DNA from: Octopus sinensis
Taxonomy: Eukaryota
DNA length: 64,000 bases
Assembly (NCBI RefSeq): GCF_006345805.1
Contig: NC_043002.1
Coordinates: forward strand, 78,740,001 to 78,804,000
Direction: 5' to 3'
The position numbers and the translations under genes were made by a program. Under the pieces are notes generated by a model that was not told the DNA's origin, searched no databases, and worked only from the letters and a program-made list of their open reading frames with translations. Shown in pieces: positions 4,350 through 64,000 of the stretch (position 1 is the stretch's first letter; each line of letters begins with the position of its first letter).

Positions 4350-4742
4350 AGGCCCAGGAGTGGCTGTGTGGTAAGTAGCTTGTTTACCAACCACATCGTT
4401 CCGGGTTCAGTCCCACTGCGTGGCACCTTGGGCAAGTGTCTTCTACTATAGCCTCGGGCCAACCAAAGCCTTGTGAGTGGATTTGGTAGACAGAAACTGA
4501 AAGAAGCCTGTCGTATATATGTATATATATATGTATGTGTGTGTGTTTGTGTGTCTGTGTTTGTCCCCCTAGCATTGCTGGTGTGTTTATGTCCCTGTCA
4601 CTTAGCGGTTCGGCAAAAGAGACTGATAGAATAAGTACTGGGCTTACAAAGAATAAGTCCTGGGGTTGATTTGCTCGATTAAAGGTGGTGCTCCAGCATG
4701 GCTGCAGTCAAATGACTGAAACAAGTAAAAGAGTAAAAGAGT
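4350..4742 (+). mobile_element. SINE family A, full length
   Basis: Runs from GGAGTGGCTGTGTGGTAAGTAGC to GTAAAAGAGTAAAAGAGTA. Confidence 0.85.
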
Positions 4743-5764
4743 ATGTGTTTACTATGTGGGTTTAAGCCGGAGATGTATATGCTGAGCTGAGAGAAAAACA
4801 ACAACAGAAAAAAAAACCCCAAAACCCCACCCCTACCCCCAAGATATGTCCAAAGAAAGAAATCCAGCACTGTTCATTGTTACCATTTATTGATATAAGA
4901 TCTGATAATCAGTTGAAATGAAAGAAAACATTTTTTTTTATTAAATCACTGGGGAAATAAGGAACCACATTACAACTGTAAGTGTACCCCAGGAATGCAA
5001 ATAAAAATGCCTATCTCTCAAAAATCCATTGTCAAGAGATTAAGAGTTGCTGTCTTGAGATCTCCATCTGTTTTTACTGATAGCAATATCTGAGAATTCT
5101 TTACCTCAACAACAATTATCTATGGCACACCCTTTTCTCTGTTGTCATCAACCAGGCAGGTTTGACAAAATTCAGAATATCTGTAGGATGCTAAAATAAA
5201 CTCAAATGCTATGGGACTTTGTAATGTGCTCCTGTGGGACAGAAAAAATATATCTTGTATAATCATGTTTAGTACTTGTTCGTGGTGTGCACGTTTTGAC
5301 TGTAACAGTATCCACCTTTGCTTTTGAGATTGTAAGTAATAAATAAAACAATGTACAACAACGTATAACATAATATACTTGTATGAATACATACAAGCAC
5401 CCATACAAACACACACACACACACTCATAAACTCACTCAGACATACATGCACTCACACCACACACACACTTATTTATCGACTGAAGTTGATTAGTATTCC
5501 ATCCCATTCATCACTTCAAGTTTATTGAAACATTATTCCTTATATATATCATCATCCTCCTCCTCCTCATCATCATCACTTAATGTCTGTTTCCCATGCC
5601 GGCATGGGTTAGACAGTTTCACTGGATCTGTTTAGCCAGAGAGCTGTACCAAGCTCTAGTTATCTGTTTTGGTTTGGTTTCTATGGGCTGGATGCTCTTC
5701 TTAATGCCAACACACACACACCACACACACACACCACACACACCACCACATACCATATATTATA

Positions 5765-18135: not shown

Positions 18136-18761
18136 ATTAAACTGTGGTTGCAGAACAAACAAATACAAGGTCATCCACGTAACATTTCATATCTCGAACA
18201 TTTAATCACATAATGCTTTTTCTTTCACATAGAATATACATGTATAACATCACGGAAGATGAAACATAACTCATCAGTACAAGCATATAAGAAAATACAA
18301 GAAAGTGCGTGAATACAGTTCATCTCGGTTAAAATTTAACGATTAATACTTTAGCGATTAAGAAATATATATTTTTTTTAAAAACATTACAACACCTAGA
18401 ATAATAAATACATAAAAATATAAGAAATATATAAATATATAGATATATAAAAATATAAATATAGGAAGCATATAAATAAGTAATATATAGTATATAAAGC
18501 AAGATAAAAGTTCATCGTTTAGAAATTTTTTTCGATTAAAAATTACTTTTCAGATGAAGGAAACCTATAGTTAAAAGCCAGTGCCGATTTATAGTAGCTT
18601 ATCTTTTGACTTATTTTAGAACATGTTTGAGTCCATAAAATAGGATTTGACTACACCTCCATTTAGAGCACAGTTTAAGCTATCTTTTAGTGGAAGAAGG
18701 TTTATGTTCCTATAACCTGTGTTAATTCTGTAACCCTTTAAAACAAAAGATGAGAAAGTTC

Positions 18762-19119
18762 ATTTTCGGCACTTGATGCTTTGGGTACCAGACAAAAATT
18801 GCTGCAGCTCGGCTGGGATGTGTTACCCCCACCCTCCCTATCCCGCAGATATTGCTCCTTCGGATTTCCACTTGTTCAGAAAAGTTTTAATTGTAAAAAT
18901 TTCAATTCCTTAGATGATGTAAAAAGATACTGTGACGAATTCCTTGCCTTTGAAACCACCCCAATTCTGGGAAGAGGGTATTTTCAAGGTAAAGGAAAGA
19001 TGGAGACGTATTGGGCAACGAAATGGTTCAGATTTGGTTCATTAAAAATGTAGTCGCAAGTATTTAGTGACCTTTACTTTCCTTTAAAAATCGGAACAAA
19101 CTTTCCAGACAACCCAATA
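18762..19119 (+). mobile_element. Mariner transposase C-terminal remnant with 3' TIR
   Basis: RQKLLQLGWDVLP..., FNSLDDVKRYCDEF match the mariner C-terminus (frameshifted); TIR ...ATCGGAACAAACTTTCCAGACAACCCAA + TA. Confidence 0.85.
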
Positions 19120-19198
19120 TAAACATAACAATCAAATACGAATATAAACTTGAAAAATTAAAACCTAAATTGAAAGAGGCGATTAAAATTTTTTTCCT

Positions 19199-19253
19199 AA
19201 CCTGCAGTCGTTTCAGAAAAGTATTTGAAATTCAGCCCTCCTTCCTCAGGGTT
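19199..19253 (-). ncRNA. Type I hammerhead ribozyme motif, probably mutated at the cleavage triplet
   Basis: Minus strand: AACC-CTGAGGA-AGGAGGG...CTTTTCT-GAAA-C-GACT-G-CA-GGTT. Stem I is 4 bp, stem II 7 bp with G.U pairs, and GCA replaces GUA. Confidence 0.6.
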
Positions 19254-19682
19254 CCTTTCTCGAGGTAAAATCCAGCAAAAAGCATTAAGGCACTACATGG
19301 TGAGTATTCAGTTGGTGAAAGTTCAGTTTTTGAGTATTGATGAATAAGCAACAGCATAATATCTGATTTTTTATTACCCACAAGGGGCCAACAAAGAAGG
19401 GACAATACAAATCGGGGAACTTAAAATATAACAAAAGTGGATGAAAAATAAGACGAAATAAAATTTTAAAATAATGAGTTATGAAAAAGATATTACAATG
19501 AGGTGCAATGTCCACTTGATCCCCGAAATCAAGTGGTTATATTTTTGTCAGTCTTTCGCATATTGATTTTTTCAAAAATTTTACACAATTCACAAAGTTT
19601 ATCGCACAAAAATTTTCATAGAGTTTCACAATACCTTTTGCTAACAGAATTTTCTTCTTTTTTTTCCTTCTTTTCCACAATT

Positions 19683-20936
19683 TTAAATGTATTCTATCTC
19701 GTGCACTAGTGTGTCATATCTCTCGACGTGGGATGGACACTCCTTCAATCGACACTTCCAGTGATCCACCATGTATCTTTTTGCGGCCTCCATGAATCCC
19801 TGGACACTATCCTCGTGAACTAGAGCACTGGCCTCAATCTCGGTTCCCATTTCAACCCATGATGTTTTCCTTGTTCTCCCTATTATCTCGTCCATTTCAG
19901 GACATTTCTTGTATATCACAAATTCTCCGTAAAATCGGTGTCCCCACTTCAAAACTGTGGTTTCTGTTGTGTGTTCCTTTGTCTTCTTTTTAGGACTGGT
20001 TGCTTCTTTGTTCTCTACTCTTAGTTTCTCCCTTTCTCTCTTCTTTCTTTCTATATTTTCTTTTACTGTCGGTGCATCTTTTTCAAGTCCGAACAGAGAC
20101 AGAAGACTTGGTTTTTTCTTGAGCTCTTTTTCTGCTTTTTCTCTTTTTTGTTTCTTTTGTTCTTTTCCTGTTGTTTCTTTTTCCTTGCTTTCTTTTTCTT
20201 TCTTTGCACTGGCCTTTCCTTTCTCTTGTCGCTTTTCCTTCATTTGTTCCTTCTCTGTTGCTTCTTTTACCTTATTTTCTTTCTCTTTCAGTGTGTTGTT
20301 TTTTCCATTCTCCTGTTCTTTTTTCTCTCTCTGTTCTTCCTCTGTAGCTTCTCCACTCTGTGTCTTATTTTGATCCATTTCTTTCTCCACTGTAAATTCA
20401 TATAGTGGACATTCTGCTCTTATATGACCTCTTGTTCCACATAAGTAACAGTTCGGCCTTCTTCCCTCTACAATTATGCCAATTGTCCTTCCATTTTCAA
20501 CCTCTATCTGAAAGGAAATTCGCTCTATATCCTCTATTGTGGCCATCAGCCACAACTCCACACCGAATCCCTTCCAGTTCACGACATTGGTCTCTGTGAT
20601 CGACCCCAGTTCTATTTCATCTTCAGCCGACCCTAAGATGGCTGTCACCAGCCATCCCGTCTTTATCTCCGGTGGGACGTTTGGGATCTTAACCCTTACT
20701 CCTCGTCTTCCTTTGTAAGTAGGTAACATAATAAAATTTTCCGCTCTGAGTACAGTGGAAGATAGCGAGGCTGCCTCCTCACTTGTTGCACACCTCACTT
20801 CCACTGTACCATATTTCTTTCCTCTGCTTACATACGTTGCTTTGTTCATTATGTCACCAAGACACTTTTCTATCTCTTCTATCGAAATTCGCATTAGTTT
20901 CCTTGAGTTCTTGTCCTGTGTCCTGTATATTATCAT
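19683..20936 (-). CDS. Gag/ORF1-like nucleic-acid-binding protein with a CCHC zinc knuckle (417 aa; ~463 aa if joined to the ATG at 21075)
   Basis: Uninterrupted, non-repetitive ORF with CYLCGTRGHIRAEC (C-X2-C-X4-H-X4-C), an RRM-like N-terminal region (GTVEVRC; VRVKIPNVPPEI), a K/E-rich linker and an SPKKK motif. This layout is typical of L1/Tx1-type ORF1 proteins. Confidence 0.85.
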   Translation of the reverse strand: MIIYRTQDKNSRKLMRISIEEIEKCLGDIMNKATYVSRGKKYGTVEVRCATSEEAASLSSTVLRAENFIMLPTYKGRRGVRVKIPNVPPEIKTGWLVTAILGSAEDEIELGSITETNVVNWKGFGVELWLMATIEDIERISFQIEVENGRTIGIIVEGRRPNCYLCGTRGHIRAECPLYEFTVEKEMDQNKTQSGEATEEEQREKKEQENGKNNTLKEKENKVKEATEKEQMKEKRQEKGKASAKKEKESKEKETTGKEQKKQKREKAEKELKKKPSLLSLFGLEKDAPTVKENIERKKREREKLRVENKEATSPKKKTKEHTTETTVLKWGHRFYGEFVIYKKCPEMDEIIGRTRKTSWVEMGTEIEASALVHEDSVQGFMEAAKRYMVDHWKCRLKECPSHVERYDTLVHEIEYI

Positions 20937-21589
20937 TTTGTTGTCTATCTCCTCCGTTGTTTCTGCTTTTTACATATTTCTCATATTCCTTCATTTGTTC
21001 CTTCTTGAAAGCCACATCTCTTATCACAAGCGACGAGCCACTCTTCGTTGCGGCAACCCCCGCATACGTCTCCATGACTGGGGGTCGATGCTTCTTCTAT
21101 AAAAAGTAACGACACGCAGCGACAAGCGCCTCTCGCGATTTGATCCTGTTTCATCTCTCTCTACAATTTTTCACTTTTTTTTACTCTTTCACACAATAAT
21201 AACGTCCGACTCTGACAGCATAATGTCTGGTTCTGCAGTTTTTCAAGAGGATTCAACGTTTAAATAAGAAATGAAAATCATTGAAAGGTTAACTTTAGTT
21301 AATCTTGCAAATATTAGCCAATTGGAATATTCCACTGTGTAAAAAAATAATTTAAGATTACAGGTTTGTGCATAAGTGTTCATTGGATCTAATGATCTAA
21401 TTGGACCGTATTTTCAAAAAGCTTTTATATTCTAAAAAATTATATTTTAAAGTTTAAGAAAATTATAAGACGCTAAATATTTATGCGTTAAACTAATAAA
21501 CCTGTTTGCTGTTTACACACCCGTCTTCGTCTTTTGTTCGTTTCTTTTGTAAATTCCAAATATATATGTATATATATGTATGTATATAT

Positions 21590-22470
21590 GTAAGTGTATG
21601 TGTTTTGGTATTGGCAACATGAATGACAATGGCCAGAGACTACTTGAATTTTGCACATACCACAACCTGTGCATCACTAACAAATTCTTTGCCAACAAGG
21701 CATGCCACAAGGCATCTTGGAGACATCCAAGATCTCACCACTGATATCAGCTGGATCTCATCATTACACGAAGACCCTTTCTGGATTCTGTTCAACTGAC
21801 TCGTAGTTACCACAGTGTGGATTGTGACACAGATCATTCACTAATAAGAAGCAGGGTGAGGATTCACCCTAAAAAAGTCCATCACTCCAAGAAAATGGGC
21901 CGCTGTTTCTATCAAAGTTGCCCTCAGTAGCTGCCCAACCACCTCTGCTGAAAGTAGGTGGAATTATATCAGGGAAGCTTTGTATACCACATCAATAGAT
22001 ACTTTCGGCATGAGAGAAAGGCAAAACCCAGATTTTGTTCAGTGCTGGGCTCTCAGAGCTGGAAACAGTTATCGAAACAAAGCGTGCAGCTCTGATGTAA
22101 TACAAGAGTGATTCTTCTATAAAGTCACTTGAAGAACTCAGAAAGGCAAGAAATAAAACCCAACTGACTGCCAGACACTGTGCAAATAGGTATTGGCAGG
22201 AAATCTGTCGGAGTATCCAGTCAGCTGCTGACAGTGGCGACACCTGTGGGATGTATGCCGATTTGGAGAAGGCCCTCGGTCCATCTGCAACCAAGTCAGC
22301 CCCTCTGAAATCAACTACTGGGGATCTCATCAACGACCAAAGCAAGCAAATGGATAGATGGGTGGAGTACTACCAGGACCTCTACTCACGAGAGACCCCG
22401 GTAACTGAGGCTGCAATCGAGAGTGTCAAGATCTTGCCAGTCATGTGTAAACTTGACAGTCTGCCATCTA
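21590..22470 (+). mobile_element. RTE LINE fragment (APE endonuclease end and linker), decayed
   Basis: FGIGNMNDNGQRLLEFCTYHNLCITNKFF...SWRHPRS...LDLIITRR...SYHSVDCDTDHSL, then [29 protein letters not shown]. Confidence 0.85.
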
Positions 22471-42489: not shown

Positions 42490-43850
42490 CTAGCAGAGAT
42501 ACCCAGCATTGCTTGGGATTAAAATGACATAGTTTGTAAATATATTGTATATTTATTACAGTTATATTGAAACATGTGATATGGAAAGTGCAGCATTGAT
42601 GACGAAACATTTATGGAGTAAATGATGGGCTAATTCGACTTAGCAACATGTCATGTGTCGATTGGTGGATTCCAGGCCCTAACCTGTCATTGAAAATTGG
42701 GGGCGGAGTGTATGTGATTTTGGAATGCACTGAAAAGCTGTCAGTGGATATACTCTCCTTTGCAGCAGACAGCGCTGCATCTAACATGACCCATTGTATG
42801 ATTGACAGTCGAATAAATGTAGGTTTAATGGAGATATTATATGTAAATGGGTGCACTATGGAAAGGGGCTGCAATAGGGACGTGAACAGTTGAAATGTTG
42901 CAGAAGGCAAAGGGTTGACTTCGGATTGTTGGTGCAGCTGTAGAATAAGAAACATAAACTGAGTCTATGCAGTCACATGAGAATATGTAGTAATGAATTA
43001 CTTGAAAAAATAAGGCATAATGGCTTACTACATGGTTGGTGGGAGTAGTTGGAGAATATGCTTTGATATTGAAGTCCATGCAGGAAACTGCTTTATTTAT
43101 GCAGTCTTCAGATTTGTTGGTATTACTCTGAGATAGTATCCATCTTCATCATTCACAAAGAGCAATGGATACTGGAGTGCATTGTAGGAAGTAGCAATTG
43201 CTACAAAACCTCTTGGTAAACAATATTCTTTGTTTTCCCTTGTAGAACAAATGCAAATAGATTTTTTTTGCTTCCCACACTAGAGCAGCCAACATTTAAT
43301 CACTTATGTGAGAAGCATAACTCTTCCAAATGAAGTTCCACCACAGACAGTGTTTGACTTTGGGATCTATTGATAGGCATTGCAAAGCTGATACAATTAG
43401 GAAATTGCACTCTTCTGAATGAAAAGGAATTTCTGCTCCCAATGGAATGAGAAAAATTCTGGGTGGGAAAATATCCTCTCCTTTCTGAGAGAATGGTGGC
43501 TTCAATATCATGTGGCATCATATTCCTTACCATCAGGCATGTCCATGTCCCGTTGCAGAGTATTAATGGATCCAAACTCCTCAATAACATTACTGGAGTT
43601 CCCACTTTCAGTTCCAGTCTGTGGGGAGGTAGACCTGGAGGCTCCAATGAATTGAGAAATTCTGTTGGATAGCTTACCACTTCTTCTGGATCTAAGATTG
43701 TATCAATTGATTTATAGATGTGAGGATTTCCAGGCCCATACTTCAGCAGCTGTTCATTAATTTTACTTACAGTGCTGTTTTTTGGAGCCAATTGTGGTAA
43801 TTTTTTGACCAATGGATGTAAGGGAAACAATCAATTTCTGAAAGTTACAT
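42490..43850 (-). mobile_element. Helitron 3' remnant (PIF1-like helicase C-terminus plus 3' terminus)
   Basis: LAPKN, YKSID, YPTEFLNSLEPPGLPPHRLELKVGTPVMLLR, LCNGT, AMPINRSQSQTL, CFSH; the minus-strand end is CCCAAGCAATGCTGGG...CTAG followed by T. Confidence 0.85.
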
Positions 43851-49409: not shown

Positions 49410-49555
49410 ATATTATAGTGCGGTAGACTGGTTTATGGGATTACCCTGGTTTTCTCACTCATAAGGGGTTAGCCTTATAGTGTATCTTCAGATAAACCCC
49501 TTATGAGAAAGAAACTCAGGGTAAACCCATAAACTGGCCTACCCCAGTATAATAT
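49410..49555. repeat. Imperfect inverted repeat (~60-bp arms) with a third partial arm at ~49338-49382
   Basis: ATATTATAGTGCGGTAGACTGGTTTATGGG...ATAAGGGGTT pairs with AACCCCTTATGAG...CCCCAGTATAATAT. Confidence 0.8.
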
Positions 49556-49739: not shown

Positions 49740-51468
49740 AAAGAAATAGAAAATACACGTGGAATGTAATGGGAAAGTAAGAAGAAAAAAGTGAAAATGC
49801 ACATTGGAAATCAAAAAAGTAAAGGCTTTTTATGAAAAGTAACGATAGATATATACAATTAGATGAACTGAGGTAGGGATAAAAGTAATAAAAGTCATTA
49901 TTGTGAATTGTTAAAGAGATTCAAAGGCATACTGGTTTCATAAAATTTCTGTTCACTGCTTTAAATGCGCGCCAGTTACCAAACGATGTTGGGTCTACTA
50001 GTCCCTGAGTAAAAAGATTATGTGTAAGAGAGGTAAGTAGTTCTGGATTAAGTGCAATTAGGGTAGATATAAATCTGTAATGTGAATGGTGTATGGGACG
50101 TATGGGGGTTAGTGGTATTAATTGAAAGGTTAGTAGTGTTCTGTATTATGTTATATGTTCATATTGAGTTGAGGAAGATATTTATTGATGAAAGTTGATT
50201 CTTTATTCATTCTTTGCTGTACTGAGGTGTTCTGTAAACATTGATAGAAGGGGGAAATTAGGAAATTAGGATTAAAGTTCGTAGCACACTTTTCTATGTG
50301 TTCACTGACCTGTATCTGTCTGTATTGTGGGTGGCAGATTTGTTCTTTGTGGAGAGTGGTTCTTCGACGGAGAGATATTCCTGTTTGGCCAAAATAATGA
50401 TTACCACACCCTAAGCATGTAATGGCATAGATTAGGTTTTCTGAGGCACAGGTGAAATTTGATTTAATCTTCAATATTTCATCTTGTTTAAAGTGGAACT
50501 CTGAACCCTCCAAAAGGTAGGGGCATGGGCCACAGTTAGGTCGACCACATTTTTGAACTTTTGGTTCCGTTGTTAATGGATATAGTTTTGCACTGGTTAA
50601 TATTTTCTTCAATGATTTAGGTTGCATTTTGCTTTTGATAATTTTGTGTGAGCCTAAAATTTTGTTCATTGTTTTATCTCCTGTGAGGATGGGTAGGTTT
50701 TGGATGATAATGTTGAAGGCTTCATTGTTTCTAGAGTTATGTGAGGAGATGTATGGGGATATTTTTAAGTCTGGTGTAGTATTTCGGTTGACTTCTCTTA
50801 ATGTTAGAGTATCTATTTCCTTGGCTTGTTTAATACCATTATTAATAATATTGGGTAATGTCTTTTGATTAGTATTGATCTCAGTTCAAGGATTCTTCGT
50901 TCACGAGTATAGGTGTCTGAAACTATGGTACAGATTCTTTTCACTAGATTATAAGGTATATTCATTTTTATGTGTTTGGGATGGCATGAGTTGAATAATA
51001 GATATTGTTTTGAATCTGTGGGTTTATAGAAGATGTCTGTTTCGATGTAGGTGTTGACTATTCTAATTTGGATGTCAAGAAAAGGGAGTTGTTTACTGCT
51101 GTGCTCCATGGTGAATTGAATGTTGCTATTAATATTGTTAAGCAATATTTTGAAATCAAGGAGTTTGTCCATGCTATCTTTCCAAAGTATAAAGCAATTG
51201 TCCAAATACCGCTTCCAGTTCTCCTTTAAATAGCAATGAAATAAGGTGCCATATTTTTGTAGTGATGGTTGGTATATTTTAAATTCTAGGTAGCCCATTA
51301 CAGGGTTTGCAATCACTGGAGCAGCTCTGGTTAACCATTGCAATTCCACATTTTTGTCGATATTAAACTGTATTGAACATGAAATAGTTATTCAGTTGGA
51401 TAAGTTGGAGTGCTGCAATTATGAATCTGTGGTTGATACATCCTGGGATCTCTTCTGGGTATTTATTT

Positions 51469-62880: not shown

Positions 62881-64000
62881 ATAGCTATATATATATATAT
62901 ATATATATAGATAGATATATACATATATATATACAGAGCACCACTACATTCACCCAGTGCCCCCAACTGCCATCTCTGCCTCCATGAAATATCCTCCAAT
63001 AACGCACAGTATCCATCAACAAGAGGTATGATTTGTCATATTGCTGTCACCAGAAAAATGCCGTTCTGACAAATTTCAGACCTCTGACCGCTGACAACCC
63101 GGATATATCACCTTAGCACCAGCTGCTACTTTGCACTGCCTGCACCAAGGTTACTGCTACCAACCAACTCCATGAGCTGGATCGCCATTTCCTAATTTCC
63201 AATGTTTACCAACCCCTAACACATACTAACCCCCAACACTTACCAATTCCCAACACTTGTTTTACACATGTACACTTGTGTATGCATGCATGCAAATGCA
63301 CATGTGCACCTGCATGTGTGTGTGCACACACACTCGTATCCATGTGTATGTATTATTTGACTTTTCACCATAAAAGGAAGATAGGGCTGGAAAGAAAATG
63401 CCTGACTGTGAAAACGTTTGAAAATCGATGGAAGAATGTAGCAGGGATGTTGTGAGTGAATGTAACCTCATGAATGCAACGCAGGACATATCTCAGGTAT
63501 CAGTGGCGAGGCAGGGCTCGTGGGGTTCAAATTGAACCCGCCTTCCCACTCCATCCGTAATGTCTTCCGGTCTGTCCTACCATTCGATTTATTTATATTT
63601 TTGTGAATTTTTAATGTCATCTTTATGTTATATCCATCTGTCCATCTGATCCCAATCAGATTGCATTGTCCCTTATCTATGTTGTCCCCTTGTGGGAAAT
63701 TTTAAAAAATCACTCGTATGCAAACAAATATACATATGTACATCTGAATGACTTCGCATGTGTGTGTTTGTATGTGTGTGCATGTGTGCATATGCATGTG
63801 TGTGCATGTGCATGTGTGTGTGTGTGCATGTGTGTATGTTCATCCATGTGTGTGTGTGTGTGCAGACATGCATGTGCACATATACAGATGCATGCACTCG
63901 CATCAATATACACATGCATGCAAGACTATATAAGTGCATCTGCTCACCCACTATACTGGCACATACTGCTCCTTCCTACTTCCACCCCAACAACCTGACC

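What the first reader, a model, noticed from the sequence alone, without database searches (positions are those of the whole stretch)
19120..21190. RT-less gag/ORF1-only element with a 3' hammerhead ribozyme (best candidate for an undescribed system)
Seen: a ~2-kb minus-strand unit with a CpG-rich 5' leader, one nearly intact CCHC-knuckle ORF, ~430 nt of 3' region, a type I HHR motif (19253-19199) and a short T-rich tail. No ORF2, RT or endonuclease is adjacent. Established: L1/Tx1-type ORF1s have an RRM-like domain plus knuckle; ORF1-only HAL1 elements exist; HHRs mark Penelope-like terminal repeats and non-coding retrozymes. Inferred: a non-autonomous retroelement pairing an L1-like RNA-binding protein with PLE-type ribozyme processing, possibly mobilised in trans by Penelope RT and possibly via circular or multimeric RNA. 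I know of no described family with this exact layout, but could not search.
Basis: partly seen in the sequence, partly recalled or inferred. Interest (0 to 1): 0.85.

Follow-up and report, generated by a model that had tools for sequence, protein, structure and literature searches.

The report
ORF1-only octopus LINE derivative, no ribozyme
This is a 1.85-kb octopus jumping gene that kept only the RNA-binding first gene of an L1/Tx1-type LINE plus that LINE's 3' end signal; the proposed hammerhead ribozyme lies outside it, in unrelated target DNA, so the exotic part of the finding falls away.

Summary
The ORF, the CCHC knuckle, the CpG-rich leader and the absence of RT are real. The element is shorter than claimed. 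It runs 21214..19365 (-), 1,850 bp, between 14-bp target-site duplications.

Its protein is predicted as RRM-RRM-CCHC, then a K/E-rich linker, then a family-specific C-terminal domain. It is 30-40% identical to ORF1 of a full-length L1/Tx1-like LINE seen in related Octopus vulgaris loci. That LINE carries APE, RT and zf-RVT. The element shares only its last ~45 nt with that LINE, and a SINE carries the same tail.

Twenty related units in eight loci all lack ORF2. Subfamilies differ with dN/dS of 0.05-0.25, so this is a long-lived ORF1-only lineage, analogous to HAL1 or HeT-A.

The "hammerhead" (19253-19199) lies 112 nt or more beyond the 3' end, inside a separate repeat that these elements use as a target. 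The window's flank is the empty site for a sister insertion 54 bp downstream in another locus. The motif has no helix I, no Rfam match and no excess stability. Its CUGA box is AGGA in one of three copies. None of 16 family 3' UTRs holds even the core boxes.

Verdict: an ordinary non-autonomous LINE derivative, with head-to-tail clustering worth a note.

The parts
21215..21228 (-). 5' copy of the target-site duplication (AGACATTATGCTGT)
   Evidence: 13/14 identical to 19364-19351. It sits exactly at the homology boundaries with paralogues.
21076..21214 (-). 5' UTR or leader, CpG-rich. The conserved block ATCGCG(A/C)GAGGCG..CTGCGTGT lies at 21139-21110.
   Evidence: CpG o/e 1.54 against 0.34 for the window. 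The start CAGAGTCGGACGTT matches the 5' ends of the L004 and L005 copies. The block is conserved in the L001, L003 and L005 units.
20970..21075 (-). N-terminal ~35 codons of ORF1 (METYAGV...), in a different frame from the rest. One frameshift lies near 20972-20966.
   Evidence: ORF 20854..21075. It aligns with the N-terminus of the intact 467-aa paralogue L001 11523-12926.
19683..20969 (-). Main ORF1 frame. It is open from 20969, the first ATG is at 20936, and the stop is at 19685-19683.
   Evidence: dN/dS against other subfamilies is 0.05-0.25.
20457..20936 (-). Two tandem RRM-like domains (aa 1-75 and 76-158 of the 417-aa ORF)
   Evidence: AlphaFold2 gives pLDDT 90.9 with two beta-alpha-beta-beta-alpha-beta units. 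The best Foldseek matches are the tandem-RRM proteins IMP3 RRM12, Hsh49 and nucleolin RBD12, at E 5e-5 to 8e-4.
20409..20450 (-). CCHC zinc knuckle (CYLCGTRGHIRAEC)
   Evidence: Pfam zf-CCHC. Both cysteines are nearly invariant in 31 relatives. PDB profile hits go to nucleocapsid knuckles only.
19956..20408 (-). Lys/Glu-rich low-complexity linker
   Evidence: Translation. It is the least constrained part, with dN/dS 0.15-0.25.
19686..19955 (-). Family-specific C-terminal domain (~90 aa), of unknown fold
   Evidence: Conserved among ORF1-only subfamilies. No Pfam hit. Low-confidence model, pLDDT 58. No profile similarity to the C-terminus of the partner LINE's ORF1.
19365..19682 (-). 3' UTR
   Evidence: The last ~190 nt align at 78-84% to the L001 and L004 units. 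The whole UTR plus ~90 nt of ORF is 92% identical to a chimeric sister element.
19512..19536 (-). Conserved stem-loop: 9-bp stem CCACTTGAT/ATCAAGTGG with loop TTCGGGG
   Evidence: Present in all 16 family 3' UTRs. There is one compensatory pair (C-G in the others, U-A here), plus a G-U and a few mismatches. The evidence for structure is weak.
19365..19410 (-). 3' tail box TTGTATTGTCCCTTCTTTGTTGGCCCCTTGTGGGTAATAAAAAATC, shared with the autonomous LINE and a SINE. It contains AATAAA.
   Evidence: It is the only part of the L003 LINE (nt 4971-5019) that matches the ORF1-only units at the DNA level.
19351..19364 (-). 3' copy of the target-site duplication (AGATATTATGCTGT)
18600..19350 (-). NOT part of the element. 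This is flanking repeat 'R2', the target DNA. It holds the claimed HHR-like motif (19253-19199) and, at 19310-19289, the uninterrupted site that is split by a sister insertion in L005.
   Evidence: Three copies exist: window, L002 at 91-93% and L005 at 83%. The L005 A2 element has its own 22-bp TSD TGAATACTCACCATGTAGTRCC, 54 bp downstream of the window's insertion point.

Best explanation
The unit at 21214..19365 (-) is one copy, with a single frameshift, of an ORF1-only non-autonomous non-LTR retrotransposon of Octopus.

It keeps three things: a CpG-rich 5' leader (presumably the internal promoter), a complete ORF1, and a 318-nt 3' UTR. The ORF1 consists of two RRM-like domains, one CCHC knuckle, a K/E-rich linker and a family-specific C-terminal domain. 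The last ~45 nt of the 3' UTR are the same 'tail' as that of a full-length L1/Tx1-like LINE (ORF1 + APE-RT-zf-RVT ORF2) and of a SINE.

Proposed mechanism (inferred):
1. The element is transcribed, and its own ORF1p coats the RNA.
2. The partner LINE's ORF2p recognises the shared 3' tail, in stringent, SINE-like fashion.
3. ORF2p inserts the RNA by target-primed reverse transcription, leaving 10-22-bp target-site duplications.
4. New copies tend to land, in the same orientation, at or next to the 3' end of resident copies and in a few preferred repeats. This builds mixed head-to-tail clusters, which DNA-level duplication then amplifies.

Shown: the anatomy, the TSDs, one empty site, the tail sharing, the lack of ORF2 in 20 units, and purifying selection on ORF1. 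Inferred: trans-mobilisation, the promoter, and the target preference.

The hammerhead-like motif is a chance core match in the target repeat and plays no part.
For: Boundaries and mobility:
- Every paralogue loses homology at 19361-19368.
- TSDs: 14 bp in the window, 18 bp at L004 A and 18 bp at L003 B, 22 bp at L005 A2.
- The window's 19310-19289 serves as the empty site for L005 A2.

ORF1-only status:
- 20 units lack ORF2: L001 x8, L006 x4, L003 x2, L005 x2, and one each in L004, L007, L002 and the window.

Long-lived coding lineage:
- Between subfamilies pS is 0.6-0.8 and pN 0.12-0.27. dN/dS is 0.05-0.07 in the RRM-CCHC part.
- Relatives occur in O. bimaculoides, O. sinensis and Argonauta.

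Partner LINE:
- L003 11222-16222 has an ORF1 that is 35-40% identical, plus Exo_endo_phos, RVT_1 and zf-RVT.
- Its best solved relatives are human L1 ORF2p, at 2e-11 for the APE and 4e-21 for the RT.
- DNA similarity to the ORF1-only units is limited to the last 45-49 nt.
- The same tail sits on a SINE and on window 63348-63712.

Fold: two RRM-like domains at pLDDT 91.

Literature:
- Type I ORF1p is RRM + CCHC and occurs in L1/Tx1 (PMC5203782).
- HAL1 is an ORF1-only L1 derivative (PMC5753468).
- SINE/LINE tail sharing marks stringent 3'-end recognition (PMC3747384).
Against: - No experiment or transcript data shows activity.
- This copy has a frameshift, and 6 of 8 L001 units share a C7-to-C6 frameshift.
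- Much of the copy number in hand comes from DNA-level duplication, not retrotransposition. The pairs window/L002, L001/L006 and L003/L007 share flanks.
- The partner LINE was not placed phylogenetically, so L1 versus Tx1 is unresolved.
- The C-terminal domain has no detectable relative in the partner's ORF1. The ORF is therefore not simply 'the partner's ORF1'.
- Structural evidence for the 3' UTR hairpin is weak: one compensatory pair.
Confidence: 0.82

Rival explanations
1. The unit extends to about 19120 and ends in a type I hammerhead that processes its RNA. It would be mobilised by a Penelope-like RT, perhaps through circular or multimeric RNA.
For: - CUGAGGA...GAAA boxes lie at 19249-19196, with a 2-bp helix III closed by a loop containing the palindrome CUGCAG. 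This feature recalls dimeric PLE hammerheads (own knowledge).
- A Penelope-like remnant (GIY-YIG) exists elsewhere in the window at 50151-51349.
- The family does form tandem arrays.
Against: - The motif lies 112 nt or more beyond the 3' TSD, in a separate repeat.
- A sister element sits 54 bp further into that repeat with its own TSD.
- No helix I can be drawn next to the core and cleavage site.
- Helix II is G-U-rich and carries a 13-nt indel among copies. CUGA is AGGA in L002.
- The fold z-score is +0.79.
- No Rfam hammerhead appears, even at E<=10 on 301 nt.
- The core pattern occurs at chance frequency.
- None of 16 family 3' UTRs has the boxes, and no HHR was found in the arrays.
Confidence: 0.03
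2. A host gene family, that is a domesticated ORF1-derived RNA-binding protein, amplified by tandem and segmental duplication rather than a mobile element.
For: - There is strong purifying selection between subfamilies.
- Tandem arrays and whole-cluster segmental duplicates exist.
- Copies are annotated as protein-coding genes in O. vulgaris, O. bimaculoides and O. sinensis.
- pN/pS is 0.29 even between the duplicated window and L002 copies.
Against: - TSDs flank single units at three unrelated sites, and one empty site is known.
- The LINE/SINE tail lies at the exact 3' end.
- A sister lineage shows chimeric 3'-module exchange.
- Most copies have frameshifts.
- The pN/pS figure is inflated by a transition bias in a K/E-rich ORF, and L002 carries a 16-nt deletion.
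Confidence: 0.07
3. A one-off, internally deleted dead copy of an ordinary LINE, in which ORF2 was lost by deletion at this locus.
For: Distant homologues (30-40% identity) are the ORF1 of full-length LINEs with APE-RT.
Against: - All 20 units of at least three subfamilies share the same ORF1 - stop - ~320-nt UTR - tail layout.
- They carry a C-terminal domain and a 3' UTR that the LINE lacks.
- Divergence between subfamilies is at synonymous saturation with low dN.
Confidence: 0.02
4. The HHR-like motif is a real but non-canonical (for example dimer-only) ribozyme of the separate flanking repeat R2, unrelated to the ORF1-only element.
For: The motif region is kept in three R2 copies at 83-93% identity. 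CUGA is intact in two of them, and the CUGCAG loop in all three.
Against: - Its conservation equals that of the surrounding repeat.
- There is no helix I.
- One copy has lost C3 and U4.
- There is a 13-nt indel in helix II.
- No Rfam match or stability signal was found.
Confidence: 0.04

Closest known systems
HAL1 (half-L1) of mammals
   Same: It is a non-autonomous LINE derivative that encodes only ORF1p and depends on a related autonomous LINE (PMC5753468). HAL1 arose several times. Here too, at least two ORF1-only lineages coexist: family A and the chimeric B'.
   Different: HAL1 has the mammalian Type II ORF1p (coiled coil-RRM-CTD) and a poly(A) end, with relaxed recognition. This element has a Type I-like RRM-RRM-CCHC protein with an extra private C-terminal domain. 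It has no poly(A), and it shares a specific 45-nt tail with its partner and with a SINE.
HeT-A / TART of Drosophila telomeres
   Same: It is a gag/ORF1-only non-LTR element with CCHC knuckle(s) and no RT. It is found in head-to-tail mixed arrays with an RT-encoding relative (own knowledge; PMC1636488 for HeT-A/TART).
   Different: The octopus clusters are chromosome-internal. For example, L001 lies at 64 Mb of a 226-Mb chromosome. They have TSDs and a LINE/SINE tail. No telomeric role is indicated. The partner belongs to the L1 superfamily, not to jockey.
Tx1/L1-clade LINEs with Type I ORF1p (RRM + CCHC)
   Same: The partner LINE has APE, RT and zf-RVT, and its nearest solved relative is L1 ORF2p. 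Its ORF1 has RRM-like domains plus a knuckle (PMC5203782). Repeated same-orientation insertion into a short stretch of another repeat recalls Tx1-type target specificity (PMC3747384).
   Different: The window element itself has no ORF2. Clade placement by RT phylogeny was not done. Target specificity is suggested by a handful of loci only.
SINE/LINE pairs with a common 3' tail (stringent recognition)
   Same: Only the last ~45 nt are shared among the ORF1-only units, the autonomous LINE and a SINE. This is the classic signature reviewed in PMC3747384.
   Different: This 'SINE-like' passenger is 1.85 kb and encodes a selected protein.
Penelope-like elements, their hammerheads, and animal retrozymes
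   Same: The only shared features are tandem arrangement in some loci and a CUGANGA...GAAA letter match in the flank.
   Different: There is no HHR in the units, no pLTR and no PLE RT/GIY-YIG nearby. Retrozymes are non-coding (PMC4918200; bioRxiv 10.64898/2026.07.22.740005).

Membership tests
Hammerhead ribozyme (type I, PLE-type minimal) | Conserved core boxes CUGANGA and GAAA with an NUH cleavage triplet | tested here: inconclusive
   The boxes are present at 19249-19196, with GUU before the putative cleavage site. The pattern occurs at chance frequency, 9 hits against 8.4 expected. CUGA is AGGA in the L002 copy.
Hammerhead ribozyme (type I, PLE-type minimal) | Helix I formed by the strands directly 5' of CUGA and 3' of the cleavage site | tested here: not met
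   The 5' strand ..AAGGAACC and the 3' strand AGGAAAAAAAUU are not complementary. The only complementarity (UUUUACCU with AGGAAAAA) lies 13 nt away from the core. The MFE fold does not form it, and z = +0.79.
Hammerhead ribozyme (type I, PLE-type minimal) | Match to curated covariance models (Rfam hammerhead families) | tested here: not met
   No hit at gathering score in the window. No hit at E<=10 on 3.3 kb or on 301 nt. Caveat: minimal PLE variants may escape these models.
Hammerhead ribozyme (type I, PLE-type minimal) | Belongs to the element, i.e. recurs in its other copies | tested here: not met
   None of 16 family 3' UTRs has the boxes. The motif lies in target repeat R2, beyond the TSD.
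Hammerhead ribozyme (type I, PLE-type minimal) | Self-cleavage | not testable with these tools
   Needs in vitro transcription and a Mg2+ assay.
ORF1-only non-autonomous LINE derivative (HAL1-like kind) | Encodes a protein homologous to ORF1p of an autonomous LINE | tested here: met
   tblastn gives 30-40% identity over about 200 aa to the ORF1 of the full-length LINEs in L001, L003, L005, L006 and L007.
ORF1-only non-autonomous LINE derivative (HAL1-like kind) | No ORF2 (endonuclease or RT) within the unit, as a family trait | tested here: met
   All 20 units have the layout ORF1 - stop - ~240-380-nt UTR - tail.
ORF1-only non-autonomous LINE derivative (HAL1-like kind) | Retrotransposed copies: TSDs, empty site, LINE-type 3' end | tested here: met
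   TSDs of 14, 18 and 22 bp. The empty site for L005 A2 lies at window 19310-19289. The tail is shared with the LINE.
ORF1-only non-autonomous LINE derivative (HAL1-like kind) | Mobilised in trans by the partner's ORF2p | not testable with these tools
   Inferred from the shared 45-nt tail only.
HAL1 sensu stricto (mammalian half-L1) | Type II ORF1p (Transposase_22) and a poly(A) 3' end | tested here: not met
   There is no Transposase_22 hit, and the protein is RRM-RRM-CCHC. The 3' end is ..GGGTAATAAAAAATC with no poly(A).
L1/Tx1 superfamily (partner LINE and its Type I ORF1p) | ORF2 with APE, RT and C-terminal zf-RVT; ORF1 with RRM(s) plus a CCHC knuckle | tested here: met
   Pfam finds Exo_endo_phos, RVT_1 and zf-RVT. 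The best PDB relatives are L1 ORF2p. The RRM-like folds and the knuckle are shown.
L1/Tx1 superfamily (partner LINE and its Type I ORF1p) | Tx1-type sequence-specific target choice | tested here: inconclusive
   Five or more same-orientation insertions fall within an ~80-bp stretch of repeat R2. Three of them share the nick C|ATCGATACTC. The L003 LINE nicked exactly at the end of a resident tail. The sample is small and biased.
Penelope-like element / retrozyme | PLE RT with or without GIY-YIG in the unit, or a non-coding tandem unit with one HHR per repeat | tested here: not met
   The units encode ORF1 only and have no HHR. The nearest PLE remnant is 29 kb away.

The most novel reading that the evidence does not exclude
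Octopods harbour a guild of long-lived, protein-selected ORF1-only LINE parasites: family A with a private C-terminal domain, plus chimeric lineages that swap a common 3' module. These would integrate by re-using the nick site at the 3' end of resident tail-bearing copies and a few preferred repeats. The result would be chromosome-internal, HeT-A/TART-like mixed head-to-tail arrays with their autonomous L1/Tx1-like partner. This would be a 'tail-homing' mode of LINE integration, in which the ORF1-only members may supply, or compete for, ORF1p.
Probability: 0.25. Interest if true: 0.55.

Novelty: new member of a known kind. Interest (0 to 1): 0.3.

Why it matters
It does not hold.

What remains is a clean invertebrate counterpart of HAL1 and HeT-A. 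It is an ORF1-only LINE lineage kept under purifying selection, using the same 45-nt tail as its L1/Tx1-like partner and a SINE. This is useful for three things:
- annotating cephalopod genomes, where these units are currently called 'uncharacterized protein' genes;
- asking what ORF1p does for a non-autonomous element;
- studying stringent 3'-end recognition in the L1 superfamily.

The clustering and re-use of nick sites could make target choice of an L1/Tx1-like LINE testable, but that part is only suggested here.

Tried and rejected
1. Rfam search for a hammerhead: whole window at gathering score, 3.3 kb and 301 nt at E<=10, and the L001 array at E<=1. Nothing was found.
2. A second HHR-like core at 49491-49434 (-), near the PLE remnant. 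It is one arm of a long palindrome and gives only weak miRNA-like hits, so it was rejected.
3. Search for an empty site for the window's own insertion, by joining its two flanks. Only microsatellite noise came back, and no spanning match.
4. Homology of the C-terminal domain to the 'FPxDVG' C-terminus of the partner-type ORF1. My eye-alignment was not borne out by hhalign, which gave probability 0.2%.
5. Structure of the C-terminal domain. pLDDT was 58, too poor for a fold search.
6. Profile search of the C-terminal domain in the 5.8-billion-protein set. It returned no hits at all, not even known family members, so it is uninformative.
7. PDB sequence search with the N-terminal profile. Only the knuckle matched.
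8. ARAGORN on the tail-sharing SINE. No tRNA was called.
9. Pfam on the mariner-like and APE-like ORF fragments beside the unit. No hits.
10. Phage collection search with the element. No match, as expected.
11. Covariation in the shared tail and the 3' UTR hairpin. Both are mostly invariant and gave little structural evidence.
Full report
**What is there**

On the minus strand, the window has a 417-aa ORF at 19683..20936. All homologues found are from Octopus, so the window is octopus DNA. Pfam sees only a CCHC knuckle at aa 162-177, at 20.2 bits against a 20.8 cut-off.

A paralogue in O. vulgaris locus L001 has an uninterrupted 467-aa ORF starting MATYAGV. The window encodes the matching METYAGV... 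from 21075 in another frame (ORF 20854..21075). The true ORF therefore starts at 21075 and carries one frameshift near 20972-20966. The 139-nt leader has CpG obs/exp 1.54, against 0.34 for the window.

**Boundaries**

The unit was compared by BLASTN with eight related loci. Every paralogue stops aligning at window 19361-19368, right after ...GCCCCTTGTGGGTAATAAAAAATC.

The 5' end, CAGAGTCGGACGTT at 21214, matches the 5' ends of the copies in L004 and L005. Directly outside these two points lie AGACATTATGCTGT (21228-21215) and AGATATTATGCTGT (19364-19351). This is a 14-bp target-site duplication with one mismatch. The element is therefore 21214..19365, 1,850 bp, with a 318-nt 3' UTR.

**The hammerhead claim**

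The motif (19253-19199) starts 112 nt beyond the element's last base. Several independent results argue against it:
- Rfam finds no hammerhead at gathering score in the window. It finds none at E<=10 on 3.3 kb or on 301 nt.
- The 86-nt region folds no better than shuffles, with z = +0.79.
- The strands that should form helix I are not complementary.
- The loose core pattern occurs 9 times (4 distinct sites) in the window, against 8.4 expected.

The flank 19364->18600 exists in two more copies, L002 at 91-93% and L005 at 83%:
- In L002 the element and the flank are equally diverged: ORF 93.2%, 3' UTR 95.3%, flanks 93.2% and 93.3%. That pair is a segmental duplication. There, CUGA reads AGGA and 'helix II' is 13 nt longer.
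- In L005 the same flank is present, but the ORF1-only element sits 54 bp further in. It has its own 22-bp duplication TGAATACTCACCATGTAGTRCC, and the window's 19310-19289 is the uninterrupted empty site.

The flank is thus a separate repeat (here called R2) used as a target. None of 16 family 3' UTRs contains even CUGANGA...GAAA, and the 8-unit array has no Rfam hammerhead. The ribozyme reading is rejected as a feature of the element.

**The protein**

HMMER run on the first 183 aa against 1.84 billion representatives gave 423 relatives at E<=1e-3. The named ones come from O. vulgaris, O. bimaculoides, O. sinensis and Argonauta hians.

AlphaFold2 on a 31-sequence alignment gives pLDDT 90.9 and two beta-alpha-beta-beta-alpha-beta units ahead of the knuckle. 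The best Foldseek matches are tandem-RRM proteins, at E 5e-5 to 8e-4. TM is only ~0.3, as expected when the angle between the two domains differs.

This layout is the 'Type I' ORF1p (RRM + CCHC) described for L1/Tx1 elements (PMC5203782). It is followed by a K/E-rich linker and a ~90-aa C-terminal domain. That domain:
- is conserved within the family;
- has no Pfam hit;
- gives no confident model;
- has no profile similarity to the C-terminus of the partner-type ORF1.

**The partner**

In L003, 11222-16222 is a full-length LINE flanked by an 18-bp TSD. It contains:
- an ORF1 that is 35-40% identical to the ORF1-only family;
- an APE domain (Exo_endo_phos);
- RVT_1 with YADD;
- zf-RVT.

Its nearest solved relatives are human L1 ORF2p. 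Further copies lie in L001, L005, L006 and L007.

At the DNA level this LINE matches the ORF1-only units only over its last 45-49 nt. A SINE and a LINE 3' fragment at window 63348-63712 carry the same box. This is the classic shared-tail signature of stringent 3'-end recognition (PMC3747384).

**A lineage, not an accident**

Twenty units in eight loci have the same ORF1 - stop - UTR - tail layout and no ORF2. Subfamilies are saturated at synonymous sites (pS 0.6-0.8) but have pN 0.12-0.27. dN/dS is 0.05-0.07 in the RRM-CCHC part and 0.15-0.25 in the linker.

A sister element in L005, called B', joins a different ORF1 (30% identical) to the last ~425 nt of the window's subfamily at 92% identity. 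The 3' module is therefore exchanged between ORF1-only lineages. The closest known kinds are HAL1 (PMC5753468) and, for the arrays, HeT-A/TART.

**Clustering**

- Units sit head to tail: A x8 then LINE in L001, A x4 then LINE in L006, and A,A,LINE in L003. In L005 the order is another tail-bearing element (cut by the locus edge), then LINE, A, B', A.
- In L003 the LINE's first nick fell exactly at the end of the resident unit's tail.
- In L005 five same-orientation insertions fall within ~80 bp of R2, and three share the nick C|ATCGATACTC.
- Much amplification is at the DNA level. L001/L006 and L003/L007 are duplicates of whole clusters including their flanks. Six of eight L001 units share a C7-to-C6 frameshift.
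- L001 and L003 share a 489-bp upstream flank at 91% identity, although their units are only ~70% alike. This is unexplained.

A site or 'tail-homing' preference is plausible but rests on few, biased loci.

**Verdict**

The unit is a real, slightly damaged copy of an ORF1-only non-autonomous derivative of an L1/Tx1-like LINE. It is most likely mobilised in trans through the shared tail. There is no ribozyme and no Penelope link. It is a new member of a known kind, of modest interest.

Noticed in passing
window 63348-63712 (+): A 3' end fragment of the autonomous L1/Tx1-like LINE. It is 77.6% identical to L003 LINE nt 4654-5010, and tblastn matches the ORF2 C-terminus. It ends in the same GCCCCTTGTGGG tail box.
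   Followed up: partly
L005 8150-9875: A chimeric ORF1-only element ('B''). It has a distinct RRM-RRM-CCHC ORF (294 aa open, ~30% identical to family A) fused to the last ~425 nt (ORF end + 3' UTR + tail) of the window's subfamily at 92% identity. This suggests exchange of the 3' module between lineages.
   Followed up: partly
L001 3778-4261 and L003 6857-7329 (also L006, L007): The arrays of two different ORF1-only subfamilies (~70% alike) are preceded by the same 489-bp flank at 91% identity. That flank itself ends in a tail-like CCAGATGGATAATAAAAAATT. Same-site reuse versus locus duplication with unit replacement is unresolved.
   Followed up: partly
L002 12355-12715, 47785-48145, 21970-21611(-); L004 12291-12560: An abundant ~300-nt SINE (head TAAGGCGGCGAGCTGGCAGAAACGTTAGCA..., internal GTTCTGAGTTCAAATTCCGCC) carries the same 3' tail box as the LINE and the ORF1-only units. 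ARAGORN calls no tRNA in it.
   Followed up: partly
window 20789-18608 vs L002 9471-11660: In this segmental duplicate, the ORF part shows ts:tv of 53:21 and pN/pS of 0.29. The flank shows ts:tv of about 1:1, and the L002 ORF carries a 16-nt deletion. The cause could be compositional bias or something else; it is not resolved.
   Followed up: no
window 50151-51349 (-): A Penelope-like element remnant. One ORF has a GIY-YIG domain (Pfam E 8e-4, below the cut-off). An upstream ORF looks RT-like by eye, with no Pfam hit. It is 29 kb from the finding and unrelated to it.
   Followed up: partly
window 49415-49550: A long, near-perfect palindromic hairpin that gives weak miRNA-family hits. It contains a CUGAAGA...GAAA letter match that is not a hammerhead.
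   Followed up: partly
window 43300-43830 (-): An ORF with a Pif1 helicase 2B domain (Pfam E 7e-15). It is probably a Helitron or Pif1-like helicase fragment.
   Followed up: no
window 18773-19053 (+) and 21580-21744 (+): ORF fragments that read like a mariner/Tc1 transposase C-terminus (..DIAPSDFHLF..) and a LINE APE domain (..NGQRLLEFC..) flank the unit on the opposite strand. Pfam gave no hit for the two ORFs tested, so the identifications rest on my reading only.
   Followed up: partly
L005 1-6345 and 27612-33929: The five-element LINE/ORF1-only cluster lies next to or within two large haemocyanin (tyrosinase/Haemocyan_bet_s) gene models.
   Followed up: no
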